Shown here one piece after another: positions 1 to 58,201 of a stretch of DNA of 64,000 bases (position 1 is the first letter of the stretch; every line of letters begins with the position of its first letter). The position numbers were made by a program, and so were the translations under genes. The notes under the pieces are model-generated. The model was not told the origin of the DNA and made no database searches. It saw only the letters and a list, made by a program, of their open reading frames with translations. Where the stretch lies: IMG/VR virus record IMGVR_UViG_3300046694_000296, positions 62,001-126,000 of that record, one strand, 5' to 3'.

Positions 1-1
1 G

Positions 2-2681: not shown

Positions 2682-2760
2682 TCCCCGTCACGTATAAGTG
2701 ACGCGTTACTATACTTCTCATTAACCGCCCGGTCGCACGGGCGTTCACTGAAGGAAGAGC

Positions 2761-3171
2761 ATGAGAAAGAAACTGTTGAGCATCCTGGGCCTAGCTGCGC
2801 TGTTCATCCTCACCGCGGCGGTGCTCACAAGCTGCGGGCACCGCGACGACTACGCCTATCAGCAGCCCGTGGTGCAGCAAGCGCCGGTGGTCGCCGCCGC
2901 GCCCATGATGGTCGCGCCCGCTCCGGTAACGGTCGTTGCCGCGACGCCTGCGCATGACGGGTTCCTAACGGGCATGTTGATGGGCCACCTCCTCTCGAAC
3001 GGCGGCCCGAGTTACCACCCGCCGGTCTACCAGCGTGACATTCACCACAACACGACGATCGTCCAGCGCAATACCACGATCGTGCGGCCCGCGATTGCAG
3101 CGCCGCGTGCCAACACCTACGTCTATCGCCCATCCCGCAGCACGACCTTCGGATCGTTCAAACGTCGATAG
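2761..3171 (+). CDS. Putative lipoprotein
   Basis: Basic N-terminus, hydrophobic signal, lipobox LTSC, Pro/Val/Ala low-complexity body. Confidence 0.7.
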   Translation: MRKKLLSILGLAALFILTAAVLTSCGHRDDYAYQQPVVQQAPVVAAAPMMVAPAPVTVVAATPAHDGFLTGMLMGHLLSNGGPSYHPPVYQRDIHHNTTIVQRNTTIVRPAIAAPRANTYVYRPSRSTTFGSFKRR

Positions 3172-3295
3172 TCGCGCCAGCAGTCTGATTTGAGAATGTA
3201 GGTCGGGCGCAATGCCCGACCCAATCGAGAGGTTCCATCGACGTCGCGCACCGGAAGGTGGCGAGCTCAATGCAGTCTTTCAACCAGGAGCACAC

Positions 3296-3982
3296 ATGCA
3301 AGACAACGCCATCAAACTGTTGGACCACGGCCACATTCGCCTCGTCGAGTCGATGGGCTCGGACCTGTCGATCGTCCGCAACGCCCGCGTGAGCTACGAC
3401 GCCGAATGGCGCACGGGCGAGGACGCCGGCAAAGATGCCAAGCTGATCGACTACCTCGTCAAGAACCGCCACACCAGCCCTTTCGAGGCCGTGACCTTCA
3501 CCTTCGACGTGAAGGCGCCTATTTTTGTGTTCCGCCAGTGGCACCGGCATCGCACGGCGGCCTACAACGAAATCTCTGGGCGATACGCCGAGCTGCCGGA
3601 GGAGTTCTACGTCCCGATCCTCGCTGACATTACGGAGCAGTCGTCGTCCAACAAGCAGATGCGCACGGACACGCAGCACCCGATGGCGCAAGAGTTCGCC
3701 GACATTATTCGCTCAACCTGCGAGCAAGCCTTCAGGCAATACCACTACCTGATCGAGAACGGCTGTCCGCGCGAACTCGCGCGCTCGGTGCTCCCGCTCG
3801 GCACCTACAGCCATATGTTCTGCACCGTCTCGCTGCACAACCTTATGCACTTCCTGGGCTTGCGTCTGCACTCGCACGCGCAGAAGGAGATCCGCGTCTA
3901 CGCCGAAGCGATGCTGGAGCTGATCGAGCCGGTCGTGCCGGTGGCGGTCGCCGCATACCGTAAGCATCGCATCGCCCATTAA
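3296..3982 (+). CDS. thyX: FAD-dependent thymidylate synthase
   Basis: HTSPFE, RQWHRHRTAAYNEISGRY ThyX motif, ELARSVLP; AGGAG RBS before ATG 3296. Confidence 0.96.
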   Translation: MQDNAIKLLDHGHIRLVESMGSDLSIVRNARVSYDAEWRTGEDAGKDAKLIDYLVKNRHTSPFEAVTFTFDVKAPIFVFRQWHRHRTAAYNEISGRYAELPEEFYVPILADITEQSSSNKQMRTDTQHPMAQEFADIIRSTCEQAFRQYHYLIENGCPRELARSVLPLGTYSHMFCTVSLHNLMHFLGLRLHSHAQKEIRVYAEAMLELIEPVVPVAVAAYRKHRIAH

Positions 3983-4062
3983 ACGCATCGGTATTGCCTC
4001 ACTATACTGATAAGTAACCCGTTACACACGGTGCAAACCAAACAACCACAGGAGTAAAACAC

Positions 4063-4734
4063 ATGACGCAAGCCGCAAACACGCTGGACAACGCCACCTA
4101 CCGCACCGAAGTCCTCTCGACCGAATCGAAGCCCGAGTCGATCAACTTCGGCCCGGCCACGCTGCTGATGGCGCTGAGCCTCGCGGTGCAAGCCGGCAAC
4201 CTGCTCGATCAGGTGAAGCGCGCGGTGTTCTACGGCAAGCAGCTGGACCCGAAGGTGACGGGCGAGGCGCTGCAGGCGATCCCGGCGATGGTCAAGGACA
4301 TCAGCTTCCCGCTCGCCACCGGCCGCTACCTCGATCCGCGCGACGTTGACTTTTTCCCGGGCATTGAAGGCGAAGCCCGCAAGGCACTGTCGCTGCAAGG
4401 CGTGGACGTGCGCCTGCTGCACGCAGCGGTCGGCCAGTTCACCGAGTCGTCCGAGTTCATCGAGGCGCTGATCCCGACGTTCTTCGGCACGCCGGTCGAC
4501 AAGGTGAACCTGCTGGAAGAGCAGGGCGATAGTTCATGGTATGGCGAGATCGCGCTCGACGCGCTCGGCTACAGCCGCGAGCAGTGCAATTTCACCAACA
4601 TCAAGAAGCTGAAGGACAAGAAGGCGGGCCGCTACCAGAAGGGCGCATTCGATCCGAACGCTGCGATCAACCGTGACACGACCGCCGAGCGTGCGCTGCT
4701 CGAAGCAGGCGCTGATGCACCGGCGGCCGCCTGA
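4063..4734 (+). CDS. MazG-like nucleotide pyrophosphohydrolase
   Basis: LLHAAVG..TESSE, NLLEEQGD..WY, NIKKL, RY..G.F..AAINRD pattern. Confidence 0.75.
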   Translation: MTQAANTLDNATYRTEVLSTESKPESINFGPATLLMALSLAVQAGNLLDQVKRAVFYGKQLDPKVTGEALQAIPAMVKDISFPLATGRYLDPRDVDFFPGIEGEARKALSLQGVDVRLLHAAVGQFTESSEFIEALIPTFFGTPVDKVNLLEEQGDSSWYGEIALDALGYSREQCNFTNIKKLKDKKAGRYQKGAFDPNAAINRDTTAERALLEAGADAPAAA

Positions 4735-5360: not shown

Positions 5361-5364
5361 CCGA

Positions 5365-5403
5365 GAAAGGGAACCGACAATATCAATCAGTCGGTTCCCT
5401 TTC
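5365..5403. terminator. Probable bidirectional intrinsic terminator
   Basis: 14-bp perfect stem GAAAGGGAACCGAC / GTCGGTTCCCTTTC with 11-nt loop. Confidence 0.7.
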
Positions 5404-5429
5404 AAATCAACCAATTACACGAGGACAAC

Positions 5430-6508: not shown

Positions 6509-6510
6509 AC

Positions 6511-6849: not shown

Positions 6850-6914
6850 TTCCAATCGCTCACGCTACTATACTGGTAAGTAACACATTACCAACCACTT
6901 ATTACAGAGGGAAC

Positions 6915-7382: not shown

Positions 7383-7450
7383 ACCTCAAAACCGAAAATC
7401 CGCGCCGCGCGCGGACCCGACTTTTCACCACCTATAAGGATCTACCCATC

Positions 7451-7900: not shown

Positions 7901-8061
7901 CACGGACATCTTTCACGGACATCTGGGCCATCGACGTCGATCAGCGCCTCATCGATATTTTCATGCTCCACGCGGGAATGGTCGATCCGATCTGAATATC
8001 GAACGGGCCAAGATTCGCCCACTATACTAAGTAACAAGTAAGTTACTAATTTGAGGTGAAA

Positions 8062-9620: not shown

Positions 9621-9913
9621 GATCCTGCTGTTCAATCTCTTGGTGCCCGCGTTTTCGAACCCGAAGGTGGCGCATTTACGGCTGCTCTCGACCGTGGTGC
9701 TCCTCATCAAGTTACCTCTATTCGGGCTGCTTGGTCAGGTGAGCTCGGAGGACGTGACGATTGAGGAATTAGCGAAACGTCTGAGGTCGGTCCAATAAGC
9801 AGTCTGTAGTCTGTAATTGCAATTGAGTGCACAGGGTTAAGCGCTAAGGCGCTTTTGTTTTAGCCTCGTGCCTAAGTAATAGCTTACTCATACACTAATA
9901 GGTGGAGAGGCTC

Positions 9914-16015: not shown

Positions 16016-16264
16016 GCCCGCGCTGCCACGGCGCCGGCGGGCCGGGCCCGGGGAGTCGACCCTTGCCCGGGCATCGACCCGACTATCTACCGGTAGGCAG
16101 GGGTGCGGCGCACCGTGCAACTTCTTGCACGTTTCGCGCAACTTTTTACCATCGAGTTTGAAACGCGTCCGTGGCTGATGGCTATACTGGACAGTAACCA
16201 GTAACTTACATGTGCCAAGGTTCGATGCGCAGAATTAGCACATCGCAACCACGGGGAAAATCCC

Positions 16265-19790: not shown

Positions 19791-19830
19791 ATCTGTCGCG
19801 TAAGTCACGCGTAACTTAGGAAAAAACACC

Positions 19831-28336: not shown

Positions 28337-28365
28337 TTGCAGCAAGTAACCCGTTACTTTAAGAT
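28337..28365 (+). promoter_or_regulatory. Sigma70-type promoter with palindromic operator in the spacer
   Basis: TTGCAG-17bp-TAAGAT; spacer holds AAGTAACCCGTTACTT (28344-28359). Confidence 0.75.
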
Positions 28366-28424: not shown

Positions 28425-29099
28425 ATGACGAATGCAGCTAAAGAACAAGTTATCACCCTCGAAAACGTGTTTATCGCTATCAACCGCGCGAATGACCGTT
28501 ACAACGCAAAGACGGGCAGCGCTCACATGCAAGACGACCTGAAGAAAGCGCGCGGTTACTGGGACGAAGCGCTGTGCACGTTCGTTGCGGGCATGCTGAA
28601 CCGGGCGCGTATCGATCAAGTCGAATTTCTCGCGACCATCGCAGATAACATGCCCGTCAAAGCGGTAATGCGCGCTAGTGAGTTTTTCGCATGCTTGCAT
28701 GCAAAGAACTATCGTCAACTCGACGGTGTTACTGCGCTGTCGATTCTTAGCGCAGTGCATGCGGGCGCAGTGTCGCGTAGTGCGGTTTTCTTTGCTGCAA
28801 CCGGTCGCGGGAATGAATCGACGTCAGATGTGGTTAGCGATATTTCGCTGGTTCGCAAGCTTCAACGTGCGCTGGGTAAGACTGTGGGCGCAACGACCGA
28901 AAGCACGCAGAATTCCCGCTCTTTCGGGACTAACGGGTTTTGCAAGTATCTGCGCATGGGTGAAATGGTCAAAGCAAAGGGCGCAGAAGCACAGTTGACC
29001 GTCAACGCTAAATCCCCCTTTGTCGCTGCAATTGCAAAGATGGTAGAGCAAGCAAGCGAAGACACCCTCTCGTTGGTTAAGGGCGCGAAGAAAGAGTAA
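28425..29099 (+). CDS. Hypothetical protein
   Basis: 224 aa; more A/T-ending codons than flanking genes. Confidence 0.8.
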   Translation: MTNAAKEQVITLENVFIAINRANDRYNAKTGSAHMQDDLKKARGYWDEALCTFVAGMLNRARIDQVEFLATIADNMPVKAVMRASEFFACLHAKNYRQLDGVTALSILSAVHAGAVSRSAVFFAATGRGNESTSDVVSDISLVRKLQRALGKTVGATTESTQNSRSFGTNGFCKYLRMGEMVKAKGAEAQLTVNAKSPFVAAIAKMVEQASEDTLSLVKGAKKE

Positions 29100-29166
29100 G
29101 TAACGCGTTACGCTACCGGGCGCACACTGCGCCCGGTTCAATCAAACCATTCTCCCGATTAGCACC

Positions 29167-33435: not shown

Positions 33436-33543
33436 GATTTCCTTTTTTAAAAGTAAGTTATGAGTTACTTTATACCGCTCCAGCGGTCGCGGCAAGTGCG
33501 TTCGTGTCCTATCATTTGCAGGGGGCGAGAAGAGGGGGCTACC

Positions 33544-35015: not shown

Positions 35016-35118
35016 GGCTTTTCCCGTAAAGTAATATGTAGCTTACTTTAAAAGAGGCGACGGCTGGCGTCTAGCGCCGGTGTGTCCTATTCTGTTTTAA
35101 CACTAGGGAGCGCCAAAA

Positions 35119-35550
35119 ATGACACCTTTAGAACTCAGACGCCTGCGGAACATTTTCCTGGTGGTATTTTGCGGCTCGGCTGCTTTCATCGCTGCCGACG
35201 AACGAGTCAGGTATGCGACGTCGTGGCAGTCTGAGGCGGGCGACATTTCCGCATACGAGACGCCTGTCATGTCGGCCAAAGATATTCTCGGAAGTCGTAA
35301 GCAAACATACGGGCAAGCGGCGCTGGCAGACTCTGCTTCGATCCTTCCTTTAATCATTGCAACGATCAGTAGCGCCACTTCTTTGATCGGAGCAATCGGT
35401 GCGACCGTGATTGCTTGGCGCAGAGAGAATCGCGAATCGAAACGTCAGGAACACGATATTGAGAAGATCCGGCTCGACATCGAAAAGCTGCGCGGTGAGC
35501 TTGAGAAAAAGGAAGCCGCGCAGCGTCGTAAAGTCAAGCGGCTCTCTTGA
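35119..35550 (+). CDS. Membrane protein with TM-WRRENRE-coiled-coil C-terminus (paralog B)
   Basis: GGGAG RBS; C-terminal half aligns by eye with 33544..34032. Confidence 0.7.
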   Translation: MTPLELRRLRNIFLVVFCGSAAFIAADERVRYATSWQSEAGDISAYETPVMSAKDILGSRKQTYGQAALADSASILPLIIATISSATSLIGAIGATVIAWRRENRESKRQEHDIEKIRLDIEKLRGELEKKEAAQRRKVKRLS

Positions 35551-37252
35551 ACCTCGAGTAGTCGAAGTCGCTCAAGATGTTTTCGGCAAATCCCGGTGTG
35601 CTTCTGATGATCGAGATCCGCTCGTTCTGGTGGTCCCGCAGCGTCGTGTTGGCCGCCTCGATGAAATCGACCACGAACGCGACGTTCGGCCCGTGCTTCT
35701 TCTTACGCAGGCCCCGGCCGATCCGCTGGCGGGTCTGCACCTCGGCCTTGCCCGCGCCCGCGAGCACGATCAGGCCCACCGCCGGCACGTCGACCCCGAC
35801 GTCCATGATCGACGTGCCGATCACCGCATCGACGCGGCCGTCACGCAGCGCGTTCAACGCCGCCTTACGCTCGGTGTGGTCGTTCGCGCCCTTGATGAAG
35901 GCGACGCGCACGCCCGCCTGCGTGAGCATGTCCGAGAGCTGCCGCCCGTGCTCGGTGCGCGAGACGAGAATCATGCCCGGCAGCCCGTGCTGCTTGGCGC
36001 GGCTCACCTCGTAGACGATCGCGCGGTTGCGCTCGTCGTTGTGCACGACGCCGATCTCGTAGCACTTGGGCCACGGGGTCGAGCGAAACAGGCGGTGCGT
36101 GACGAGCTTGCCCTTGACCTCTTCCTGATAGAAGGGCGCCGCGGTCTGCAGCTGGACGAACTTGAAATAGGGCTTGGCCAGCACGCCGAGGTCGATCAGC
36201 TGCTTTTCCGTGACCGTGATCGCCACGGGCCCGCTGCACGCCTCGAGGCGCAGGTTGTCCTCGGGTGAGTCCTTCATGAACGGGGTGGCCGTCAGCGCGA
36301 GCCGGTAGTGCGCGTTCACGCAGTGGCGCATCACCTCGTAGAAGCCATTTCCCGACGCCTCGTGCGCCTCCTCGAGGATCACGAATTCGACGCCCGCCAG
36401 GAACTTGATCATTTCCTCGCGCTTCCGGTTGTGATCCTGCACCTTCGCCTGGATCGTCGCGACCACTTCGACGTCGGCCGGGCGTTTCGCCTCGAGCTGG
36501 CGGCGCAGCGCGGTCGTAGCATCCGCGATCTGCGGGGCGGGGAGCTTCTGCTTTTTCAGCTTCGCCTGCAGCTTCTCGACCTCGCGGTCTTCGGCGGCGT
36601 CCCGGTTCTTGATGTAGGCGAGCATTTCGCCCTCATCGGTCCAGAGGTCGATCGCCTGGCTGATCGTCTGCACCATCCCGAGCGTGAACTGACGCGAGAA
36701 GTCCCGCTGGCTGTCGCCCACGACGCCCACGCGCTCGCCAAGGTTCTCGGTCACCGCGTCGCCCATCTGATACATCAGGATGCCCCGCGTGGTCAGAAAA
36801 AGCGTCTTGCGGCCGATGCGCTTGTAGCAGATCCGTGCGATCCGGCTCTTGCCGCCGCCCGTCGCCACGCGGGCAATGATCGCGCGGTGCTTCACGAGCT
36901 TGTCGGCCACCTCGGGCTGGTAGTTGTAGGCCGGGTCATAGCCGAAGTCGTCGACCACCGGGCGCTCCGGGCCCAGAGGTGCGGGCGCGGGCTTTCTCAC
37001 GAGATTGACCTTGTAGCCAGCCTTGAGGAGCGCGGCATAGACCTTGTAGGTGAAGCCCGCCGGGAAGGTGTCGTTGTCGAAGTCGTAGAAGCTCGAGGAG
37101 CCGTCCCACGACGTGCCCTTGAACGCCTGCGAGTAGCTTGCGCCCTCGACCAGATAGGAGAGCTTCTCGCGCACGAGCAGCTTCGCCTCGCGCGTGGCGC
37201 CCATCAGCCTTGCGTTCACCGCTCCTGCGGCGAGAGTCAGTCCAGATGTCAT
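35534..37252 (-). CDS. Superfamily 2 helicase
   Basis: ATGGGKS (I), LEEAHE (II), LTAT (III), GVDVP (V), QRIGRGLR (VI). Confidence 0.92.
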   Translation of the reverse strand: MTSGLTLAAGAVNARLMGATREAKLLVREKLSYLVEGASYSQAFKGTSWDGSSSFYDFDNDTFPAGFTYKVYAALLKAGYKVNLVRKPAPAPLGPERPVVDDFGYDPAYNYQPEVADKLVKHRAIIARVATGGGKSRIARICYKRIGRKTLFLTTRGILMYQMGDAVTENLGERVGVVGDSQRDFSRQFTLGMVQTISQAIDLWTDEGEMLAYIKNRDAAEDREVEKLQAKLKKQKLPAPQIADATTALRRQLEAKRPADVEVVATIQAKVQDHNRKREEMIKFLAGVEFVILEEAHEASGNGFYEVMRHCVNAHYRLALTATPFMKDSPEDNLRLEACSGPVAITVTEKQLIDLGVLAKPYFKFVQLQTAAPFYQEEVKGKLVTHRLFRSTPWPKCYEIGVVHNDERNRAIVYEVSRAKQHGLPGMILVSRTEHGRQLSDMLTQAGVRVAFIKGANDHTERKAALNALRDGRVDAVIGTSIMDVGVDVPAVGLIVLAGAGKAEVQTRQRIGRGLRKKKHGPNVAFVVDFIEAANTTLRDHQNERISIIRSTPGFAENILSDFDYSRFKRAA

Positions 37253-37313
37253 TTCTTGCCTTATAGGAGGTCCGTAAGTATAGTAACGAATGACTTACTC
37301 ACACGGACGCATT

Positions 37314-37976
37314 ATGTCAGCCGCACAACCCAAGTTCCAGCCGGTGTCAGCGCAGGTATCAGTCGATATGCTGCGGGCGAACAGCTGGAACACCAACACG
37401 ATGTCGCCGGATTCGGAAGCCAAGCTCGACGTCTCCGTATCCCGGTTCGGCCTCTACAAGCCGATCGTGGTGCGCCCGCACCCGGACGGCGAGGGCTACG
37501 AGATTCTCGGCGGTCAGCATCGGTGGGAGGCAGCGCGGCGCGCTGGCATGTCCGAAGTGCTGATCGTCAACGTCGGGCCGGTGAGCGATCTGACGGCCAA
37601 GGAAATTGGCCTCGTCGACAACGGCCGCTACGGCGAAGACGACACGCTCGCGCTCTCGCGCCTGTTGAAGGAGATGGGCGTCGAGGACATCGGCACCTTC
37701 CTTCCCTACACCGACAGCGAGCTGGAGAACATTCTCGCAGCTTCAAGTATAGATCTCGACGACCTTGACAAGCTGGATCAGGCCGAGATGCCTGACCTCT
37801 CCGGCGCGGGGCTTGGCGCCACGCATCAGGTGATGCGCTTCAAGGTGCCCGTCGAGGACGTCGCCTGGGTCACGAGCGCGATTGAGCGCCGCCAGCGCGA
37901 GCAGGGATTCACCACCGAAGACTCCATGACGAACGCCGGCATGGCCTTCGTCGATCTCATGAAGGCATACAAGTGA
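37314..37976 (+). CDS. ParB/Sulfiredoxin N-terminal-domain protein 1
   Basis: N.N.M...L..S...FG...PIVVR...YEILGGQHRW; no obvious HTH. Confidence 0.88.
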   Translation: MSAAQPKFQPVSAQVSVDMLRANSWNTNTMSPDSEAKLDVSVSRFGLYKPIVVRPHPDGEGYEILGGQHRWEAARRAGMSEVLIVNVGPVSDLTAKEIGLVDNGRYGEDDTLALSRLLKEMGVEDIGTFLPYTDSELENILAASSIDLDDLDKLDQAEMPDLSGAGLGATHQVMRFKVPVEDVAWVTSAIERRQREQGFTTEDSMTNAGMAFVDLMKAYK

Positions 37977-38248: not shown

Positions 38249-38463
38249 GCAAACAGAGCGAAGCCAAGGCCGCGCAGCACTACAACCGCGAGCCGGTGAA
38301 CTGCGGCAACTGCCGCCATTTCGAGTTCGACGAAATCACCCACAAGGGCGCCTTCGGCGGTGGCACCTACGTCGAGCAGAAGAGCCTGCGTTGCGGCATC
38401 GGCAGGTTCAAGGTCCACAAGACCGCCAGCTGCGTGCGCTTCGAGCGCCCGGAGGCCGCATGA
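38245..38463 (+). CDS. Small Cys-rich protein (possible Fe-S or Zn binding)
   Basis: CGNC.HF...C...C..F; ATGA overlaps. Confidence 0.7.
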   Translation: MSKQSEAKAAQHYNREPVNCGNCRHFEFDEITHKGAFGGGTYVEQKSLRCGIGRFKVHKTASCVRFERPEAA

Positions 38464-39101
38464 GCGTCACCCGCACCAACGAGATTCGCGCCGTTGCCGA
38501 TCTCGTGCCCTACGCGAAGAACGTCAAGAAGCACGACGACGCGCAGGTCGCCAAGATCATCGAGTCGATCCAGCAGTTCGGCTGGACCCAGCCCATCGTC
38601 ATCGACGAGGCGAACGTCATCATCGCCGGCCACGGCCGGCGCCTGGCGGCGACCAAGCTCTCCATGACGCAGGTGCCGGTGCTCGTGCTGCGCGGCCTGA
38701 CGGACGGGCAGAAGCGGGCGCTGCGCCTGGCCGACAACCGCACGAACGAGGGCGGCATCGACACGCTGATGTTCCGCGAAGAGATTCTCGGCATCGAGGA
38801 GCTGCTCACCGGCATCTACGACGTGAAGGAGCTCGAGTTCTCCACCGCGGACCTGGGCGAGCTGAACGACGCGGCCTTCGTGCCGGACGTCGCTGAAGCC
38901 GTCGAAATGCAGGAGCAGGCGGCCCACGCGAAGGCAGACGAGGTGACCGCGCGCCGCGTGCCGCTCTCGAAGGCGTTCGGCTTCAAGGACGTCGCCGGCA
39001 GCCACGAGATCCACATCTCGCGCTTCATGGCGCGCGCGGCCGCTGAAACCGGGTTGACGGGCGCCGACGCGCTCGCGGCTTTTCTCGAAACGCTGGCATA
39101 A
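38460..39101 (+). CDS. ParB N-terminal-domain protein 2
   Basis: LVPYAKN..KH...Q...I..SI..FGW..PIVID...IIAGHGR..AA...LADN. Confidence 0.9.
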   Translation: MSVTRTNEIRAVADLVPYAKNVKKHDDAQVAKIIESIQQFGWTQPIVIDEANVIIAGHGRRLAATKLSMTQVPVLVLRGLTDGQKRALRLADNRTNEGGIDTLMFREEILGIEELLTGIYDVKELEFSTADLGELNDAAFVPDVAEAVEMQEQAAHAKADEVTARRVPLSKAFGFKDVAGSHEIHISRFMARAAAETGLTGADALAAFLETLA

Positions 39102-39118
39102 GTCACCCATTACTCACC

Positions 39119-41144: not shown

Positions 41145-41368
41145 CGCTCAAAACGACTGCCAAGACCCTCTGTGTCGTTGGGACCAAGGGCACGCTCTCT
41201 CCCTGGACGATGGAAGCTGTCGACGATGCCGCGGCCGTGAAGGGCATGGCATTCGACTTCGTGATCTGGGCGCGCACCCCCTCGAAAGAGGAATACGAGG
41301 TCGTCAACGCGACGTTGAAGGGCTCGGAGTGGGGTGATCACTTCTGGACCTGCCGGCGGCCGCGATGA
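41141..41368 (+). CDS. Hypothetical protein
   Basis: ATGA overlaps at both ends. Confidence 0.65.
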   Translation: MTLKTTAKTLCVVGTKGTLSPWTMEAVDDAAAVKGMAFDFVIWARTPSKEEYEVVNATLKGSEWGDHFWTCRRPR

Positions 41369-41796
41369 ACCTCACGACCAAGCAGATCGAGATCATGAAG
41401 GTGGTGGCCGCGGCCGCCGCCAGTGAGCCGGTCGATCTGGACCAGCTGCTCGAGCGCCTGACCTACGCGACCACCAAGGAGAGCCTGCAGTTCTCCCTGC
41501 GCGCGATCGAGCGGCACGGCCTCATCGACCGCTCGATGGCCGAGCACCGCCGCGGGCGGCTGCGACGCCTGGTGGCCGCAACGGACCTCGGCCGGGCCGT
41601 AGTGGGCGGCACAGGGCGGCCCGCTCCGGGGCCTGGCTCGACGATCGGCATGCGATCGGAAGAAGTTCTCCCGGTGCCAGCCTCAAAGGAGGTGGCTTTG
41701 ATAAGCGAAAACTTACCCGAGCCGGAGCTTCTTTCTCTCCCGGAGGTTTCTCTTCCCGAGCCGGAGATACTGCTTGAAGAAGTGTTTATTGATTAA
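41365..41796 (+). CDS. Winged-helix DNA-binding protein
   Basis: LTTKQIEIM...LDQLL...ESLQFSLRAIERHGLIDR...T..G; Pro/Glu repeat tail. Confidence 0.7.
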   Translation: MNLTTKQIEIMKVVAAAAASEPVDLDQLLERLTYATTKESLQFSLRAIERHGLIDRSMAEHRRGRLRRLVAATDLGRAVVGGTGRPAPGPGSTIGMRSEEVLPVPASKEVALISENLPEPELLSLPEVSLPEPEILLEEVFID

Positions 41797-41824: not shown

Positions 41825-41928
41825 ACTTGTCACTTTTTGCGTTTCCCCCTTATATATAAACCTTCTTTTTAATACATAGTAAAAAGCTACATTTTAAAAA
41901 CTAAGGGAAACGCGAAAAAGTGACAAGT
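41825..41928. repeat. ~27-bp imperfect inverted repeat around a 49-bp AT-rich spacer
   Basis: ACTTGTCACTTTTTGCGTTTCCCCCTTA (41825-41852) vs TAAGGGAAACGCGAAAAAGTGACAAGT (41902-41928). Confidence 0.85.
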
Positions 41929-42014
41929 AAGTAAGGATAGTGAAAGGATAAAGAGCACGATGAGATCAGGACCGCGGGTGGGAAAGTCTGCGCATGAAAG
42001 TAAGGCACGGGTTA

Positions 42015-42043
42015 TTTACATTCTTCCCGCGGCCCGGTATAGT
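42015..42043 (+). promoter_or_regulatory. Sigma70-type promoter ahead of the virion genes
   Basis: TTTACA-17bp-TATAGT. Confidence 0.75.
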
Positions 42044-44068: not shown

Positions 44069-44112
44069 TGTTATGGTAAGTGACCCGTTACTCTACACCC
44101 GGCACGCCCGTT

Positions 44113-46674: not shown

Positions 46675-46719
46675 TTGTAAACCCGTGGCATTCCTGTTAA
46701 AGTAAGTCGCGGGTTACTT
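46675..46719 (+). promoter_or_regulatory. Capsid-gene promoter with operator-like site over +1
   Basis: TTGTAA-17bp-TAAAGT followed by AAGTCGCGGGTTACTT. Confidence 0.7.
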
Positions 46720-46753
46720 ACTACCCATTTTCTTTTCGAAAAGGAAGATTGAT

Positions 46754-47662
46754 ATGCCATTGCTGCGAGAAGAAGCCGACAAGCTGAGTAACAATCAGCT
46801 GGTCGCAGGCGTGATCGAGGAAATCATCGACAAGGATGAGCTCTTCGCGCTCCTGCCGTTCGTCGGCATCAACGGAAAGGCTTACGTCTACGATCGCGAG
46901 AACACCCTGCCGGACGCAGAGTTCTACGACGTGAACGACGAGCTGGATGAATCGGCTGGCACGTTCACCGAGGTCGTGGCGAAGCTGCGCATCCTCGCTG
47001 GTGACGTGGACGTCGACAAGTTCCTGCAGGAAACCGAGTCCGACACGAACGATCAGCGTGCTACGCAGATCGGTCTGAAGGCCAAGGCGGTTGCCCGCAA
47101 GTTCAAGCGCACGATCGCTCAAGGCGATTCGACGGCCAACGCGAAGGAATTCGACGGCCTGCCGAAGATGGTGTCGGCTGCCCAGACGCTCGACGCAGGC
47201 GGTGCGGCCAACGGCGCGGCGCTCACGCTGTCGATGCTCGACGAGCTCGGCGATGCGGTCATCAACGGCGCGGACGCATACGTGATGCGCCCGGGCACGA
47301 TCCGCGCATACCGCGCGCTGCTGTATGCAACCGGCGGCATCCAGCCGGCGATGGTCGAAGTGCCGAACTTCGGTCAGGCGATCCTCGGCCACAACGGCAT
47401 CCCCATCCTCCGTAACGACTTCCTGTCGAACACGGAGACGAAGGGCACCAACACGAACACGTGTTCGGTGTATGCGGTTCGCCTGAACGAACTGGACGGC
47501 TTCCACGGCCTCTGGGGCGGCAAGCAAGCCGGCATTCGCGTCGAGGACATCGGCACGGTGCAGAACAAGGATGCAGACCGCATCCGCGTGAAGTGGTATT
47601 GCGGCTCGGCGCTGAAGTCCACGCGCTCGCTGGCACGTCTGCGCGGCGTGACGAACGTCTAA
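46754..47662 (+). CDS. Major capsid protein
   Basis: Position, 302 aa, strong codon bias, GD.....KEFDGL and NGIPI..NDF patterns. Confidence 0.9.
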   Translation: MPLLREEADKLSNNQLVAGVIEEIIDKDELFALLPFVGINGKAYVYDRENTLPDAEFYDVNDELDESAGTFTEVVAKLRILAGDVDVDKFLQETESDTNDQRATQIGLKAKAVARKFKRTIAQGDSTANAKEFDGLPKMVSAAQTLDAGGAANGAALTLSMLDELGDAVINGADAYVMRPGTIRAYRALLYATGGIQPAMVEVPNFGQAILGHNGIPILRNDFLSNTETKGTNTNTCSVYAVRLNELDGFHGLWGGKQAGIRVEDIGTVQNKDADRIRVKWYCGSALKSTRSLARLRGVTNV

Positions 47663-47678: not shown

Positions 47679-47698
47679 GTAAGTCACCCGTGACTTAC
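47679..47698. promoter_or_regulatory. Best copy of the dispersed palindrome
   Basis: GTAAGTCACCCGTGACTTAC; see findings for the other copies. Confidence 0.8.
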
Positions 47699-50969: not shown

Positions 50970-51022
50970 TCTAGTAACGAGTTACTTACCGTAACTCCGA
51001 CCTCTTTGCAAAGGAGTTTTGA

Positions 51023-51544: not shown

Positions 51545-51616
51545 CGGGCGAGTAAGTCACCCGTAACTTGACACAAGGCCGGCTCACGCCGGCCTGCCTA
51601 CATCGGATACCTCATC

Positions 51617-55300: not shown

Positions 55301-56803
55301 GACGTCTCCACACCTGACTCCGACGAGAGCAACGGGCGCGGCGCGATCAAGTTCCTCGAGAAGCTCGGCACTAAGTCGACCGAGGCGGCCAAGAAGATTG
55401 CGCCGGTTGTCGAATACATGAAGTCGGTCCAACTCCAGGCCGATCAAGTCGACATGGTGAAGTTCACGCGCGAGATCGTGAAGACCGATCAGGACACGCA
55501 AGCGCAATTGATCGAGAACACGCGCGACCGCATCACCGCGCAGATCGCGCTGGATAACGATCGGTGGGAGAAGGCAGCCAAGGCGCGGCTTGAGAGGGCG
55601 AAGGCTGACGGCGGCGACATTTCGAACGAAGAGGCCATGATTGACGCGGCGCGCGTCACCCGCGCGGCCGAGCAGGCGAAGCGCCTTCGCACGCCGATGG
55701 AGCAGCTGGCGATCGACTGGCAGGACACGACCGACCAGATGGCGAAGAAGTCGACGGAGTGGTCCAACTCGACCATCGACGCCTTCGTGAACGTCGCCAA
55801 GACCGGCAAGCTCAACTTCGGCAGTCTGTTCGAGTCGATCGCCACGGACATGCTCAAGATCAGCCTCCAGAAGTCGATGGGCGGCGGCCTGCAGCAGCTC
55901 TACGACGGCATCGGCCAGAAGTTCACGAACATCATCGGCAGCAACAGCAAGGCGTCGGGTGGCGAAGCGGCCACTGGCGCCGCTACGGGCTCGATGGGCA
56001 GCGGGATCATGAGCTTCCTGCAGCACCCGATTGATGGCGTCACCTCGCTCTTCAACAAGCTCACGGGTTCGGGCGACACGCTCAACTCGAAGATGGTCGA
56101 GCAGGCGCGTCAGGCCGTCATCGGCGTGAGCGCCGACACGACCACCGCGAACAGCGTCATCACGCTCGGCAACGCTGCGCTCTACGCCGCGCAAGCGCTC
56201 GCGTCGATGGGTGGCGGCGGTGGCGGCGGCATTGGCGGCGCGCTTGCAAGCATCGCGGGGGCTGCTGCATCGGCTTACTTTGGCGGGGCCGGGGCGACGG
56301 CCACGAGCACGGCGCTCGCGGGCACCCAGTCTTTCGGCAGCGGGCTGTCCGGCGAGACGAACATGAGCACGCTGATGGGCGTGCAGGGCGGCACCAACAC
56401 GCTCGGCAACTACACGTATCAGGGCGGCGCGATGTCGAACCAATACAAGTTCGCCGACGGCGGGATCATGACCGAGATGGGACCGCTCGCGCTGCGCAAA
56501 TATGCCAACGGCGGCATCGCCAACTCCCCGCAGGTTGCGGTCTACGGCGAAGGCAGCATGAACGAGGCGTTCGTGCCGCTGCCCGATGGCCGCAGCATCC
56601 CCGTGACGATCACCGGCGGTCAACAGGGCGGCGGCACGGCCCCGGCGGTGACCGTGAACGTTATCAACCAGACCAGCCAGCCGGTCACCGCTCAGCAAGG
56701 GTCGCCCCGTTTCGATGGGCGCCAGATGGTTCTCGACATCGTGCTGACGGCCGCGACCACGCCTGGCTCCTTCCGTGACGGAATGAAAGGCGCACTGAAA
56801 TGA
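52313..56803 (+). CDS. Tape measure protein
   Basis: 1496 aa Ala-rich helical, tape-measure N-terminal region, FADGGI/YANGGI and GEG..NEAFVPL C-terminal motifs. Confidence 0.95.
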   Translation: MASNLENVGYNLILDDSGFRVTAQSTAAQLKALEAQFASTGQGVKAIEQKINSAGVAFHQWVTTIGAVKFALMDIDSVFLTLPRSIMETAGELEKLTTVLKGLSTAADEAGRNADAALGKKFILNLEQNAPFKLAALTDTFVKFKTVGIDPTKGAMEALINQVAKYGGGSEQLKSASLAIQQMAGKGVVSLQELRLQLSQAIPNAAQAMADGMGMSMGELTKKISTGTVSSEMAIRKMLAVFTLDSLGSAAEQMKTWQGEIEKLNVRWELFKNDVAEAGMFDAAKKELEDIMGLFGTETAKNWSKDLSNSFVSMIGLFHDGREVLQEYIPQLLTISKLVLAAFATNMLSNFLTGMRNAVVGMNASWREYAANAITAQGAVAAKQLSVTEQILAADAKRMASIAQESELRQEALAREIANNQKLMLIYDAADARRDAARQAEYAKEIANNEKRLAANMAFLAQLKAEHAAYEAALVPLQFNSMKLGQANSPATAAEYVAAQKQTDAMQRNVQLTAAQIDVVTRDTAALMEKTAALKGVAAAELANAEATGRNSAMLVAHNAELATGIRAEREMVNNMTAMTRGAAMMESGLLKLKFVFNALGGWIGLVSIAVVAGIGFWQKYRQAAKDAAQAALDAANVKNIIAKGEADKDAVARQNTALTNNQAELGLVETQIQNRKNGIGDDGTTMIPRAGENDPEVKALRAKAAALRSAGEDIKRVRDQLQAQVDDKSAELASHSYANQYETETNKQLSGLTAAKSREIATLQTNFAKTTATMDKQSKEYTALANQLATDKNKVEQKISTDYIAALNKRQAELADAIVNNKFTGKGKELEAQKLAAAREQERIAQQLSNAQSGLQALAAPNEYVAGKDKKTAAAKPPTDLFAKKNADIKSQLAQATNELKMIVSGASEYDQIRVGAEAKIRAIWENGELDTKGHGKGAKNSRPAWDSAEVRGLIDDETMLKITENAKSQMESLKGKLAPLAAEYQESIKKLMAGDVSTPDSDESNGRGAIKFLEKLGTKSTEAAKKIAPVVEYMKSVQLQADQVDMVKFTREIVKTDQDTQAQLIENTRDRITAQIALDNDRWEKAAKARLERAKADGGDISNEEAMIDAARVTRAAEQAKRLRTPMEQLAIDWQDTTDQMAKKSTEWSNSTIDAFVNVAKTGKLNFGSLFESIATDMLKISLQKSMGGGLQQLYDGIGQKFTNIIGSNSKASGGEAATGAATGSMGSGIMSFLQHPIDGVTSLFNKLTGSGDTLNSKMVEQARQAVIGVSADTTTANSVITLGNAALYAAQALASMGGGGGGGIGGALASIAGAAASAYFGGAGATATSTALAGTQSFGSGLSGETNMSTLMGVQGGTNTLGNYTYQGGAMSNQYKFADGGIMTEMGPLALRKYANGGIANSPQVAVYGEGSMNEAFVPLPDGRSIPVTITGGQQGGGTAPAVTVNVINQTSQPVTAQQGSPRFDGRQMVLDIVLTAATTPGSFRDGMKGALK

Positions 56804-57171
56804 GCACGACCTACACGACCTTGCCGCACAACGACTTGCTCGATTCGAGCAAGTTCCAGCCGGAGAAAGAGAACCCGGCGATGGCCTCCAAGATGGACGG
56901 AGGCTATGTCGTCACCCGGCCGAAGCACACGCGAAAGCCCCGGCGCACGTTCGCCTGCGGCTTCACTGATTTCACCGACGCACAACGCGCGGACATCGAC
57001 GCGCATTTCGACGCGATGCACGGCGGCAGCGCGATTTTCTACTTCGTGCACCCGCTGTCGAAGGAGACGATCTACGTGCGTTACACGACCGATACCACGA
57101 TGCAGTGGAGCAACGCCGGCAAGGGCATGAACCCGCTGTGGTCCGTCACTTTCAAGTTGCAGGAGGTCTAA
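56800..57171 (+). CDS. Distal tail protein (gpM-like)
   Basis: Position after tape measure; MDGGY...R, FYFVHP. Confidence 0.75.
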   Translation: MSTTYTTLPHNDLLDSSKFQPEKENPAMASKMDGGYVVTRPKHTRKPRRTFACGFTDFTDAQRADIDAHFDAMHGGSAIFYFVHPLSKETIYVRYTTDTTMQWSNAGKGMNPLWSVTFKLQEV

Positions 57172-57807
57172 GTGCCAAATCCCGTATCCGTTGCAAGCAT
57201 CATCGAGAAGAACAAGGTCGGCAGCGCCGTCCCTTATCTGGCCTTCCTCGACGTGGGCGTGATCGACCCGACCACGGGCGTTGTGGCCCAGACGTTCCAC
57301 TACGTGAACAACACCGAGGAGGTGGTGCGCCAGGGCATCACCTACCTGCCGATGCAGTTCTCGCTGGAGCTGAAGACCCAGGCGGGCAGCCAGCCGCAGA
57401 TCACCGTCTCGATCTTCGACTACACGCGCGCCGTCATCCAGACGATGAACGACTACGGCGGGGGCACCGACTTCCCGGTGACGATCCGCGTGTGTCAGAC
57501 CGGCGGCCTTGACGAAGCTCCCGATGTCGAGGAGCACTTCACGATCATCCAGGCGAGCGCTGATAACTACGTCGCGAACTGGACGCTGGGCGCCGAGAAC
57601 GCGCTCACCAAGCAGTTCCCGCGCCGCCAGCAGCGCCGCGACTTTTGCCAGTGGGTCTACCGCGACGGCCGCACCTGCCGCTACAACGGCGCGATGCCCG
57701 CGTGCGACCGCACGCTCGCGGGTCCGATGGGCTGCAAGGCTCACAATAACGTCATCAACTTCGGCGGGATGCCGAACTTGGTATCCAGCAACCTCTACGT
57801 CGCGTAA
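57172..57807 (+). CDS. Minor tail protein gpL-like
   Basis: C.W.YR...C.Y.G....CD.T..G..GC..H.N...FGG.P four-Cys motif. Confidence 0.88.
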   Translation: MPNPVSVASIIEKNKVGSAVPYLAFLDVGVIDPTTGVVAQTFHYVNNTEEVVRQGITYLPMQFSLELKTQAGSQPQITVSIFDYTRAVIQTMNDYGGGTDFPVTIRVCQTGGLDEAPDVEEHFTIIQASADNYVANWTLGAENALTKQFPRRQQRRDFCQWVYRDGRTCRYNGAMPACDRTLAGPMGCKAHNNVINFGGMPNLVSSNLYVA

Positions 57808-57808
57808 A

Positions 57809-58201
57809 ATGAATGAGTCACCCGTTACTTATGTGGACCTGCTTGGCGCGCCGTTCCGAAAGGGCGGCCGCGGCCCTGACGAGTTCGACTGCTACGGCCT
57901 CGTCAAGTATCTGATCCATCGCGCCACCGGCCAGGTGGTGCCGGACTATGTGACGCCCGACGACACGGGCGCCACGCACGCGCTGATGATTACCTCGCGC
58001 GAGTTCTGGCGGCGGCTGCCCGGGCCGAAGGTCGGCTCAATGATCTTCTTCAAGATCGGCCGGGAGGTCTGCCATGTGGGCTACATGATAAGTAACGGGT
58101 TATTCATTCATGCGTGGGAGCCGTCCGGCGGCGTGACGGTGGAGCGGCTCTCGCAGTGGGAAAAACGGATCGACGGGTTCTATGAATACATCGAAGGCTA
58201 A
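57809..58201 (+). CDS. NlpC/P60 tail assembly protein (gpK-like)
   Basis: GGR....FDCYGL, HVG, FIHA. Confidence 0.88.
   Translation: MNESPVTYVDLLGAPFRKGGRGPDEFDCYGLVKYLIHRATGQVVPDYVTPDDTGATHALMITSREFWRRLPGPKVGSMIFFKIGREVCHVGYMISNGLFIHAWEPSGGVTVERLSQWEKRIDGFYEYIEG

What the first reader, a model, noticed from the sequence alone, without database searches (positions are those of the whole stretch)
2696..58105. About 20 copies of a 16-bp palindrome (AAGTnACnnGTnACTT) on promoters in every module: candidate master-repressor regulon
Seen at 2696, 4012, 6878, 8029, 9874, 16192, 19802, 28344, 29098, 33455, 35029, 37281, 39100, 44078, 46704, 47681, 50972, 51554, 57815, 58090; some copies have 1-3 mismatches. 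The best copy extends to GTAAGTCACCCGTGACTTAC. Nearly all are intergenic. Several lie 0-3 bp after a -10 box (TATACT at 4003, 6869, 8023, 16183; TAAAGT at 46698) and one fills the -35/-10 spacer at 28337-28365, which is repressor geometry. They cover metabolic, accessory and structural genes alike. Known analogy: P1 C1 repressor with many dispersed operators. The cognate protein is not identified; the wHTH at 41365 is one candidate.
Basis: partly seen in the sequence, partly recalled or inferred. Interest (0 to 1): 0.78.

Follow-up and report, generated by a model that had tools for sequence, protein, structure and literature searches.

The report
Dispersed palindromic operators of a phage-plasmid
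About 33 copies per genome of a 20-bp palindrome sit on or beside promoters all over this phage-plasmid and, in variant forms, its relatives up to Salmonella phage SSU5, which suggests one conserved phage protein, not yet identified, controls most of their transcription.

Summary
In the window, AAGTNACNNGTNACTT has 4 exact and 20 matches with up to 2 mismatches, against 0 and about 0.6-0.9 in shuffles. Across the contig, 61 of 67 copies are intergenic. The full unit is a 20-bp palindrome, GTAAGTMACS|SGTKACTTAC.

Deviations in one arm are never compensated in the other, so it looks like a protein site, not a hairpin. Most copies overlap a -10 box, the start site or the promoter spacer, which is repressor geometry. 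A few lie between a stop codon and a GC hairpin.

The 215-kb contig is a chimera of two roughly 80%-identical ~108-kb phage-plasmids, joined at window 46903-47029. Each genome has about 33 sites.

The same 20-bp frame recurs with lineage-specific changes in SSU5, a Shinella plasmid, a Cupriavidus plasmid and Rhizobium phage RHph_Y2_11. T2, A4, T6 and A8 of each arm are shared by all lineage consensus half-sites. The binder should therefore be a conserved core protein rather than a lineage-specific immunity repressor.

My best candidate (probability about 0.4) is the orphan ParB-fold protein at 37314-37976, whose C-terminal domain looks ribbon-helix-helix. No binding was shown. The closest working analogues are RK2 KorB and pSM19035 omega, more than P1 C1.

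The parts
2694..2713 (.). Palindrome copy, class 1: its right arm runs into TATACT (2710-2715); no -35 match. Lies upstream of 2761-3171 and thyX.
   Evidence: orthologous copy in genome B
4010..4029 (.). Palindrome copy, class 2: the 16-mer starts 3 nt after TATACT (4003-4008). Lies upstream of 4063-4734.
6876..6895 (.). Palindrome copy with 3 mismatches, class 2, after TATACT (6869-6874).
   Evidence: the copy in genome B has 2 mismatches
8027..8046 (.). Palindrome copy, class 2, directly after TATACT (8023-8028). Lies upstream of the exonuclease gene 8062-8637.
9872..9891 (.). Weak copy with 3 mismatches; membership uncertain.
16190..16209 (.). Palindrome copy, class 2, 3 nt after TATACT (16183-16188).
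19800..19819 (.). Exact copy, 14 nt before the start of 19831-20127. No counterpart was found in genome B.
28342..28361 (.). Exact copy that fills the spacer of TTGCAG (28337) - N17 - TAAGAT (28360). Lies upstream of 28425-29099.
   Evidence: genome B has TTGCGT-N16-TATAAT at the same place
29096..29115 (.). Copy at the stop codon of 28425-29099, followed by a GC hairpin. No promoter is evident.
33453..33472 (.). Copy upstream of the minus-strand gene 33205-33435/33495. On that strand it follows a TATAAA-like box.
35027..35046 (.). Degenerate copy in the variable accessory region.
37279..37298 (.). Copy in the divergent control region between the helicase operon (-) and the ParB-fold gene (+). 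On the minus strand it has class 1 geometry, running into TATACT.
39098..39117 (.). Copy at the junction of the second ParB-fold gene and the ABC ATPase gene.
41916..41935 (.).
42000..42019 (.).
44076..44095 (.). Copy between terminase and portal genes, preceded by TATGGT. SSU5 and RHph_Y2_11 carry their own variants at the same place.
46702..46721 (.). Copy directly after TTGTAA-N17-TAAAGT, the likely major capsid promoter.
47679..47698 (.). Best copy, a perfect 20-mer (22 with flanks). It lies after the capsid gene stop and before a GC hairpin.
50970..50989 (.). Copy 1 nt after TTGACT-N18-TATAGT, a canonical sigma-70-like promoter in the tail module.
51552..51571 (.). Exact copy after the stop codon of 51023-51544, followed by a GC hairpin.
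57813..57832 (.). Copy abutting the start codon of 57833-58201.
58088..58107 (.). Copy inside my call for ORF 57833-58201, 77 nt before the 1871-aa tail gene.
37314..37976 (+). Best candidate binder: an orphan 220-aa ParB-fold protein. It has a ParB N-terminal domain, an acidic remnant of the HTH region and a C-terminal beta-alpha-alpha domain that is probably ribbon-helix-helix.
38460..39101 (+). Paralogous ParB/Srx-fold protein (213 aa). By sequence reading alone (not modelled) it has a similar C-terminal segment. It is a less likely binder.
41365..41796 (+). It lies just upstream of the terminase genes.
35534..37204 (-). UvsW-like helicase, the first gene of the divergent minus-strand operon controlled from 37279-37298.
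46903..47029 (.). Exact 127-mer where the assembler joined phage A (window 1-46902) to phage B (46903-64000).

Best explanation
The copies are operators for one phage-encoded, symmetric DNA-binding regulator that belongs to the conserved core of SSU5-type phage-plasmids.

The unit is a 20-bp palindrome, GTAAGTMACS|SGTKACTTAC. Each 9-bp arm is itself a small palindrome (TnAnTnA), and the arm centres are 11 bp apart. That layout suits two dimers sitting on one face of the helix, as ribbon-helix-helix (RHH) regulators do.

Most copies overlap the -10 box and start site, or the -35/-10 spacer, of promoters for replication, nucleotide, packaging, head and tail genes. The bound protein would therefore shut these promoters, probably holding the lytic programme silent while the element lives as a plasmid. 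It would also repress its own operon from the site at 37279-37298.

The most likely binder is the orphan ParB-fold protein at 37314-37976. It would read DNA through its C-terminal RHH-like domain, and its nucleotide-binding ParB fold may act as a switch.

Shown here:
- enrichment of the motif and its intergenic, promoter-proximal placement;
- absence of hairpin-type covariation;
- conservation of frame and placement across distant relatives.

Inferred:
- that the TATACT boxes are promoters;
- that binding represses;
- which protein binds;
- any role for a nucleotide.
For: Enrichment and placement:
- 20 copies against about 0.6-0.9 expected.
- 61 of 67 copies are intergenic.
- 31-34 copies occur in each of four related genomes.
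- 30 of 33 copies of genome A have a counterpart at the orthologous place in genome B. Informative positions are better conserved than the flanks.

Protein site rather than hairpin:
- In 98 sites, Watson-Crick pairing between the arms never exceeds the level expected if the arms vary independently. For example, positions 7/14 pair in 30 sites against 39 expected.

Promoter link:
- All 27 plus-strand TATACT boxes are intergenic, and 18 abut or overlap a copy.
- Canonical promoters carry the copy at the start site: TTGACT-N18-TATAGT and TTGTAA-N17-TAAAGT. In TTGCAG-N17-TAAGAT it fills the spacer.

Family-wide conservation:
- The same 20-bp frame occurs in SSU5 (at least 15 copies), a Shinella plasmid, a Cupriavidus plasmid (21 copies) and RHph_Y2_11 (38 copies).
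- It also occurs in seven metagenomic or genomic relatives.
- T2, A4, T6 and A8 of each arm are shared by all lineage consensus half-sites.

Candidate protein:
- It carries Pfam ParB_N.
- Its N-terminal part matches CTP-binding ParB, Noc and KorB by Foldseek.
- The C-terminal 50 aa model as an extended strand plus two helices, with pLDDT 87.
- 7 of the top 10 VIA-align matches to that domain are RHH proteins: MazE9, ArtA-DNA, Rv0298, SvtR, CdbA and NikR (fold types from my own knowledge of these entries).
- R175, K177 and the NAG turn are invariant in 56 homologues.
- It is one of only 34 proteins shared with SSU5, the Shinella and Cupriavidus plasmids and RHph_Y2_11.
- Strand residue 171 is H where motif position 3 is A, in 8 of 9 such lineages. 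It is T or S in the 4 lineages where position 3 is C, T or mixed. The portal tree needs at least two changes of this residue.
- Its own control region carries a copy.
Against: - No binding evidence of any kind. The complex-prediction job was not folded.
- The RHH assignment rests on low Z-scores (3.4-4.7). Foldseek, Pfam and a PDB sequence-profile search gave nothing significant for that domain.
- RHph_Y2_11 is an exception: H171 occurs with C at motif position 3. Its predicted DNA-facing residues equal those of a lineage with A at that position.
- The H/T/S lineages are few and related, so the covariation is weak statistically.
- The TATACT promoters lack any -35 match, and the generic sigma-70 scan finds no enrichment. 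Their promoter status is inferred.
- Class 1 geometry, with the palindrome centred near -19 and no -35, also fits an activator.
- Several copies lie between a stop codon and a hairpin, where promoter occlusion explains nothing.
- Other conserved proteins of unknown function were not excluded, for example phrog_2500.
Confidence: 0.5

Rival explanations
1. Same operators, different protein: the winged-helix protein at 41365-41796 (phrog_900, SSU5_130), encoded just upstream of the terminase genes, binds the palindrome as a dimer.
For: - Protein-language-model neighbours include MarR/IclR-type winged helices (a lead only).
- Its N-terminal 85 aa, with the helix TTK.S.QFS.RAL, are conserved from SSU5 to this phage.
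- That helix carries substitutions in the lineages with altered motifs (Cupriavidus Q to H, L053 K to R, L050 S to T).
- Late-gene regulators encoded just before terS are a known pattern (RinA, LtrC, ArpU; from my own knowledge).
Against: - In the Shinella plasmid and RHph_Y2_11 the protein at the syntenic position has a very different helix (CAYGSLR...), or is not orthologous. Yet Shinella shares its motif with SSU5.
- tblastn finds no homologue in those two genomes.
- One recognition helix per arm does not explain why each arm is internally symmetric.
- Pfam gives no hit.
Confidence: 0.17
2. The palindrome is the binding site of an activator that replaces the missing -35 element, as phage P1 late promoters use Lpa with an inverted repeat near -22. 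On this view the regulon is a middle/late gene switch rather than a silencing system. Copies on start sites would be a secondary, repressive use.
For: - Ten class 1 promoters in the two genomes have the fixed layout TAAGTNACNCGTTAC-TATACT, with the palindrome centred near -19 and no -35 match.
- They precede replication, recombination and nucleotide-metabolism genes.
- P1 is also a phage-plasmid. The P1 late promoter layout is recalled from my own knowledge, not tested here.
Against: - In RHph_Y2_11, the Shinella plasmid, the Cupriavidus plasmid and half of the sites here, the palindrome lies just downstream of the -10 box, over the start site. An activator cannot work from there.
- Strong canonical -35/-10 promoters also carry it at +1.
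- The position relative to the -10 box is not fixed across the set.
Confidence: 0.15
3. The sites are operators of the lysogeny (immunity) repressor, in the manner of P1 C1. The candidate is the XRE-type HTH protein at contig 40676-41095 (minus strand, outside the window), which heads the parA-rep operon.
For: - It matches PHROG transcriptional regulator and repressor families.
- It sits divergent from cobT beside the Rep_3, ParA and RHH maintenance genes.
- Homologues occupy a similar place next to cobT and the replication genes in the Shinella and Cupriavidus plasmids and RHph_Y2_11, and are flanked by copies there in Shinella and RHph_Y2_11.
Against: - No homologue was found in SSU5, which has the motif.
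- Another relative carries a CI/LexA-type repressor instead.
- The recognition helix differs between genome A and relative G2, which share the motif. It is alike in G2 and the Cupriavidus plasmid, whose motifs differ.
- Immunity operators normally diverge fast, whereas this frame is kept from Salmonella to Rhizobium elements.
Confidence: 0.08
4. The copies are parS-like loading or architectural sites for partition, genome compaction or packaging. Their overlap with promoters would be secondary.
For: - The best candidate binder has a ParB fold.
- Some copies are not at promoters (47681, 51554, 29098).
- Phage-plasmid N15 has dispersed centromeres (from my own knowledge).
Against: - 18 of 27 TATACT boxes touch a copy.
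- The element already has a complete small-ParA plus Arc-like RHH pair next to rep, far from the ParB-fold genes.
- No ParA gene adjoins the ParB-fold genes here.
Confidence: 0.07
5. The palindromes act as nucleic-acid hairpins (terminators, RNase sites or 5' stabilisers), or they are sites for a host transcription factor.
For: - All genes run one way, so every copy is transcribed by read-through.
- Some copies lie in 5' leaders.
Against: - There is no compensatory change between arms in 98 sites.
- A 2-nt centre is too small for a loop.
- Closely related elements differ at motif position 3, which argues for an element-encoded reader.
- The motif was not counted in any host genome, so that part is untested.
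Confidence: 0.03

Closest known systems
KorB and its OB operators on IncP plasmid RK2
   Same: A ParB-fold protein binds a short palindrome present in about a dozen copies. Some copies lie on promoters and some far from them, and the protein acts as the global repressor of a mobile element (PMC11790492, PMC13584720). The N-terminal part of the candidate here matches KorB structures.
   Different: KorB reads DNA with an HTH domain. Here that region is acidic and degenerate, and the likely reader is a C-terminal RHH-like domain. There are 33 sites instead of 12, the host element is a phage-plasmid, and no KorA/TrbA-like partner was identified. Nucleotide binding was not tested.
Omega of pSM19035, ArtA of pSK41 and Arc/Mnt of P22 (ribbon-helix-helix global or phage repressors)
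   Same: Small beta-alpha-alpha dimers bind adjacent short subsites that overlap promoters, and they control several operons of a plasmid or phage (PMC4627068, PMC9499535). ArtA-DNA, SvtR and NikR are among the best structural matches to the C-terminal domain.
   Different: Those proteins are free-standing RHH domains of about 50-70 aa. Here the domain is fused to a ParB fold. The site count is far higher and the operator is a fixed 20-bp palindrome, not heptad arrays.
P1 C1 repressor with dispersed operators, and P1 late promoters with Lpa
   Same: A phage-plasmid whose transcription units are controlled through many copies of one site spread over the genome. Class 1 sites here resemble the P1 late promoter layout of a -10 box plus an inverted repeat and no -35. 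The P1 details are recalled from my own knowledge.
   Different: C1 operators are asymmetric 17-mers. No C1 or Lpa homologue was looked for or seen. One motif here serves both geometries.
SSU5 / pHCM2-type phage-plasmids (with RHEph10 and pLM21S1)
   Same: Gene order and core proteins are shared: TerL is 61% identical to SSU5, and 34 proteins are shared in all. The block helicase, two ParB-fold genes, ABC ATPases and terminase is the same. Plasmid modules are present (PMC7969092, PMC4447125).
   Different: This lineage uses Rep_3 rather than RepC or TrfA, and carries a divergent sigma-like gene. Its likely hosts are Burkholderiales (closest ParB-fold homologues in Burkholderia, closest TerL in a Cupriavidus plasmid). 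I found no published description of the palindrome in the searchable library.

Membership tests
SSU5-supergroup phage-plasmid (the element itself) | Shared siphovirus packaging and head genes, and the syntenic block of helicase, two ParB-fold genes, ABC ATPases and terminase | tested here: met
   TerL is 59-69% identical to SSU5, RHph_Y2_11 and the Cupriavidus plasmid. 34 shared proteins. Synteny.
SSU5-supergroup phage-plasmid (the element itself) | Plasmid maintenance genes (replication initiator, partition ATPase) | tested here: met
   Rep_3, small ParA, an Arc-like RHH and a ParE toxin lie at contig 34.9-40.2 kb. Relatives are found as plasmids in Shinella and Cupriavidus isolates.
P1 C1-type dispersed operator regulon | Asymmetric 17-bp operator read by a C1-family repressor | tested here: not met
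   The site is a symmetric 20-bp palindrome. No C1 homologue was sought. The operator form of P1 is recalled from my own knowledge.
P1 C1-type dispersed operator regulon | Many operators that overlap promoters across a plasmid prophage | tested here: met
KorB-type ParB-family global regulator | N-terminal ParB/CTPase fold with the GxxRxxA and DNxR boxes | tested here: met
   PF02195 at E 2e-11. Foldseek hits to ParB, Noc and KorB at E 1e-7 to 3e-9. GGxHRW and DNxR are conserved in 56 homologues.
KorB-type ParB-family global regulator | Central HTH domain that reads the palindrome | tested here: not met
   The corresponding helices are short, and the would-be recognition helix is acidic (TDSELENIL). 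By my reading of the sequence, no canonical ParB HTH (GKS...V..LRLL-type) is recognisable.
KorB-type ParB-family global regulator | CTP binding and clamp closure | not testable with these tools
   Needs nucleotide-binding and cross-linking assays.
Ribbon-helix-helix repressors (Arc/MetJ/CopG/omega/ArtA) | Beta-alpha-alpha fold that dimerises through the strand | tested here: inconclusive
   The models show an extended strand plus two helices. 7 of the top 10 VIA-align hits are RHH proteins, but Z is only 3.4-4.7. Foldseek, Pfam and a PDB profile search found nothing significant.
Ribbon-helix-helix repressors (Arc/MetJ/CopG/omega/ArtA) | Operator built of adjacent, internally symmetric subsites about one helical turn apart | tested here: met
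   Each arm has the form GTnAnTnAC, with T2/A8 and A4/T6 shared by all lineage consensus half-sites. Arm centres are 11 bp apart.
Ribbon-helix-helix repressors (Arc/MetJ/CopG/omega/ArtA) | Demonstrated binding of the protein to the site | not testable with these tools
   The complex-prediction job was not folded.
P1 late promoter / Lpa-type activation | A -10 box, no -35, and an inverted repeat at a fixed place near -22 | tested here: inconclusive
   Met by class 1 sites (centre about -19). Not met by class 2 sites or by most sites in relatives, where the palindrome follows the -10 box.
ParABS centromere (parS) | Sites next to a parA-parB operon that serve a partner ParA | tested here: not met
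   The ParB-fold genes have no adjacent ParA. The element's ParA lies about 60 kb away, paired with a small RHH protein.

The most novel reading that the evidence does not exclude
A previously undescribed architecture, a ParB/CTPase fold fused to a ribbon-helix-helix DNA reader, acts as a nucleotide-switched global silencer. It would load at some 15-38 dispersed 20-bp palindromes and hold the whole lytic programme of SSU5-type phage-plasmids off. This group includes about a thousand known plasmids of Klebsiella, Escherichia, Acinetobacter, Salmonella and soil bacteria. Small changes in one strand residue would re-tune operator specificity between lineages.
Probability: 0.3. Interest if true: 0.8.

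Novelty: new variant of a known kind. Interest (0 to 1): 0.62.

Why it matters
SSU5-type phage-plasmids are very common. The terminase of this phage finds 994 plasmid records, many of them in clinical Enterobacteriaceae and Acinetobacter, and their lysis-lysogeny control is essentially undescribed.

A single conserved operator on most promoters gives a direct handle on that control:
- it predicts the transcription units;
- it offers a testable regulator;
- it can be studied in SSU5, which grows on Salmonella.

Tried and rejected
- Hairpin or RNA element: rejected, because the arms show no compensatory change.
- T7-like single-subunit RNA polymerase promoter (the string CTCACTATA recalls T7): dropped. 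I saw no such polymerase among the proteins I scanned or in the annotated relatives (no dedicated search was made), and the motif is a palindrome.
- Promoter of the phage sigma-like protein (contig 45326-45964; weak Sigma70_r2, phrog_351): unlikely, because SSU5 lacks that gene yet has the motif.
- Second ParB-fold protein (38460-39101) as reader: unlikely. Its strand is identical in the Shinella plasmid and RHph_Y2_11, whose motifs differ, and it varies among lineages that share a motif.
- The 224-aa gene flanked by two copies (28425-29099): no family hit in Pfam or PHROGs and not part of the shared core.
- Complex prediction with four copies of residues 160-220 plus the 28-bp site: the job was counted but not folded, so it gives no evidence either way.
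- Foldseek against the PDB, Pfam, and a PDB sequence profile on the C-terminal domain: nothing significant.
- Generic sigma-70 scan of window 1-20000: no enrichment, because the TATACT boxes lack a -35. A second scan failed on a size slip.
- Literature: no description of the motif was found.
- My first gene call at contig 44087-45865 (minus strand) was wrong. The region encodes cobS and the sigma-like gene on the plus strand.
- Motif frequency in host chromosomes was not measured, because the host is unknown.

Full report
**1. The observation**

The pattern AAGTNACNNGTNACTT occurs 4 times exactly and 20 times with up to two mismatches in the window. Shuffles gave 0 and 0.63. My own block shuffles gave 0.03 for up to one mismatch (12 observed) and 0.87 for up to two.

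Positions 6878 and 9874 have three mismatches. 6878 is supported by a two-mismatch copy at the orthologous place in the second genome, and 9874 is weak.

A position matrix shows that the unit is really 18-20 bp: GTAAGTMACS|SGTKACTTAC.

**2. What the window is**

The window is bases 62001-126000 of a 215,656-bp 'circular' contig. That contig is two collinear, roughly 80%-identical genomes of 108.9 and 106.6 kb laid head to tail.

- The first 127 bases, the last 127 bases and bases 108903-109029 are identical.
- An independent IMG/VR contig of 105 kb is 97.9% identical to the second half alone.
- That contig runs straight across 'end of B to start of B' at 99.975% identity. It matches the contig's own A-to-B junction at only 92.5%.

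The contig is therefore an assembler's figure-of-eight through a shared 127-mer inside the capsid gene. Window 1-46902 is phage A and window 46903-64000 is phage B. Each genome, and a third relative (106 kb, 77% identical), carries 31-34 copies with up to two mismatches. The 'every module' claim survives.

**3. What kind of element it is**

The nearest named relatives are Rhizobium phages RHEph10 and RHph_Y2_11. Others are a Shinella plasmid, Cupriavidus plasmids and, more distantly, Salmonella phage SSU5. The terminase finds about a thousand plasmids.

RHEph10 and pLM21S1 are discussed as plasmid-like prophages (PMC4447125, PMC7969092). Phage A has its own maintenance block outside the window, on the minus strand:
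- an XRE-type HTH protein;
- a small ParA;
- an Arc-like 68-aa protein;
- a Rep_3 initiator;
- a ParE toxin.

It is a phage-plasmid. The closest homologues of two of its proteins are in Burkholderia and Cupriavidus, so the host is probably in the Burkholderiales.

**4. Protein site or hairpin?**

In 98 copies from three genomes, the number of Watson-Crick pairs between mirrored positions never exceeds what independent arms would give. Positions 7/14 pair in 30 copies against 39 expected, and positions 9/12 in 60 against 63. Deviations in one arm are not compensated in the other. This is the signature of a symmetric protein, not of a stem.

**5. Placement**

Sixty-one of 67 copies lie in the roughly 13% non-coding DNA. 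One of the 'genic' ones became intergenic after I corrected a gene call.

The hexamer TATACT occurs 27 times on the coding strand, always between genes, and 18 of these abut or overlap a copy.

There are two main geometries:
- **Class 1:** the palindrome runs into the box (TAAGTNACNCGTTAC-TATACT). It is centred near -19 and has no -35 match. These sites precede replication, recombination and nucleotide-metabolism genes, and the helicase operon on the other strand.
- **Class 2:** the palindrome starts 0-3 nt after a -10-like box (TATACT, TATAGT, TAAAGT, TATGGT), so it covers the start site. This class includes canonical promoters: TTGACT-N18-TATAGT before a tail gene and TTGTAA-N17-TAAAGT before the capsid gene.

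One copy fills a TTGCAG-N17-TAAGAT spacer. A generic -35/-10 scan finds no excess of promoters in window 1-20000, because the TATACT boxes have no -35. Their promoter status is therefore inferred from strand and position. Three copies in the window (47681, 51554, 29098) lie between a stop codon and a GC hairpin, where no promoter is evident.

**6. Relatives**

Thirty of 33 copies in A have a counterpart at the orthologous place in B, and changes fall mainly on the degenerate positions.

RHph_Y2_11 has none of our pattern. Instead it has 38 copies of GTCARTMAAT|ATTKAYTGAC at comparable places, for example terminase-portal and after the capsid gene. Half-sites in the same 20-bp frame are:

| Element | Half-site (outside to centre) |
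|---|---|
| This lineage (A, B, G2) | GTAAGTMACS |
| Cupriavidus plasmid | rTCAGTCAGC (21 copies) |
| Shinella plasmid | TAAGTAA.. |
| SSU5 | ATAAGTAAGT (at least 15 copies) |
| RHph_Y2_11 | GTCARTMAAT (38 copies) |

Read in this frame, T2, A4, T6 and A8 are shared by all lineage consensus half-sites. Each arm is thus a small palindrome (TnAnTnA) centred on position 5, and the arm centres are 11 bp apart.

Seven more relatives, fetched around their ParB-fold gene, show the same frame. In those lineages most copies follow a -10-like box, which is class 2 geometry.

**7. Who binds?**

Only 34 proteins of A have BLAST-detectable homologues in all four compared genomes. Among them, the plausible sequence-specific DNA binders are two ParB-fold proteins and the small-terminase-like protein.

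*XRE protein.* It has no detectable SSU5 homologue. Its recognition helix does not track the motif. One relative carries a CI/LexA-type repressor instead.

*Winged-helix candidate at 41365.* It is conserved in most lineages. In the Shinella plasmid and RHph_Y2_11, the proteins at the syntenic position are very different or not orthologous, although Shinella shares its motif with SSU5.

*Second ParB-fold protein (38460-39101).* Its C-terminal strand is identical in the Shinella plasmid and RHph_Y2_11, whose motifs differ.

*First ParB-fold protein (37314-37976).* Homologues show the true start is nine codons into the longest ORF.
- It has a ParB N-terminal fold that matches CTP-binding ParB, Noc and KorB.
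- It has an acidic remnant where the HTH should be, then a disordered linker.
- It ends in a well-predicted strand-helix-helix domain.
- In a Foldseek-independent search, 7 of the top 10 matches to that domain are ribbon-helix-helix proteins (my identification of the listed entries). Z is only 3.4-4.7, and Foldseek, Pfam and a PDB profile gave nothing.
- The strand THQVMRFKVP has invariant R175 and K177.
- Residue 171 is H in 8 of 9 lineages where motif position 3 is A. It is T or S in the four lineages where position 3 is C, T or mixed. The portal tree needs at least two changes of this residue.
- RHph_Y2_11 is an exception to that pattern.

Two RHH dimers on two internally symmetric arms 11 bp apart would explain the operator's anatomy. 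I put this assignment at about 0.4.

The complex-prediction job was not folded and says nothing. No RNA data exist for start-site mapping.

**8. How it most likely works**

A symmetric phage protein occupies about 33 operators per genome. Most overlap the -10 box, the start site or the spacer, so it would exclude RNA polymerase and keep replication, packaging, head and tail operons off in the plasmid state. It would repress its own operon from 37279-37298.

The copies at stop-codon/hairpin positions, and the ParB fold of the candidate, leave room for loading or architectural roles as with KorB.

An activator role at class 1 promoters, as with P1 Lpa, cannot be excluded. It does not fit the majority geometry.

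**9. Comparison and novelty**

The closest working analogues are KorB/OB of RK2 (PMC11790492) and RHH global regulators such as omega (PMC4627068). P1 C1 is a looser analogy.

I found no description of this motif, or of a ParB-fold/RHH fusion, in the searchable literature. That includes a recent survey of ParB-fold domain fusions.

I rate it a new variant of a known kind: a real, family-wide regulatory code whose reader is still to be proven.

Noticed in passing
window 46903-47029 (contig 108903-109029): The 215,656-bp 'circular' contig is a figure-of-eight misassembly of two roughly 80%-identical phage-plasmid genomes (108.9 and 106.6 kb). They are joined at an exact 127-mer inside the capsid gene. 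An independent contig closes genome B on itself at 99.975% identity.
   Followed up: yes
contig 34886-41095 (outside the window; L037/L038): Plasmid maintenance block on the minus strand: XRE-type HTH (139 aa), small ParA (218 aa), Arc-like RHH (68 aa), Rep_3 initiator (247 aa) and a ParE toxin. This shows the element is a phage-plasmid.
   Followed up: partly
contig 45326-45964 (outside the window; L038:9326-9964): A 212-aa protein with a weak Sigma70_r2 / phrog_351 match sits where the Shinella plasmid and RHph_Y2_11 have an annotated sigma factor. A copy of the palindrome lies directly upstream. SSU5 lacks this gene.
   Followed up: partly
window 47679-47698, 51552-51571, 29096-29115: These copies lie between a stop codon and a GC-rich hairpin rather than at an evident promoter. 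The same layout follows the capsid gene in RHph_Y2_11.
   Followed up: partly
L046/L047 (SSU5, mostly 80-95 kb): SSU5 carries a second dispersed palindrome, AAACAANTTGTTT, in 14 copies. Most lie between a GATAAT-like box and the ribosome-binding site of small genes. This looks like a separate regulon.
   Followed up: no
window 22000-35500: A lower-GC stretch (55-59%) that is poorly conserved between the two genomes, with almost no family hits. It is probably an accessory region. It still carries copies at 28344, 29098, 33455 and 35029.
   Followed up: partly
contig 43991-44040 (outside the window): Between cobT and cobS, two motif-like arms form a longer inverted repeat (TAGTAAGTGGT ... ACCACTTACTA). 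It is conserved in genome B.
   Followed up: no
window 39119-41144: Two soluble ABC-type ATPase genes and a thioredoxin gene lie between the ParB-fold genes and the terminase genes. The ATPase genes are conserved in all relatives examined and a thioredoxin- or glutaredoxin-like gene in most. Their function here is unknown.
   Followed up: no
L050, L053, L052 (relatives): The large terminase of two relatives carries an intein/LAGLIDADG insertion. A third relative has Tad2-like and Acb2/Tad1-like anti-defence genes beside the ParB-fold genes. One relative has a CI/LexA-type (HTH_3 + Peptidase_S24) repressor near the helicase.
   Followed up: no
It is conserved in genome B. It might also hold the packaging site.
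   Followed up: no
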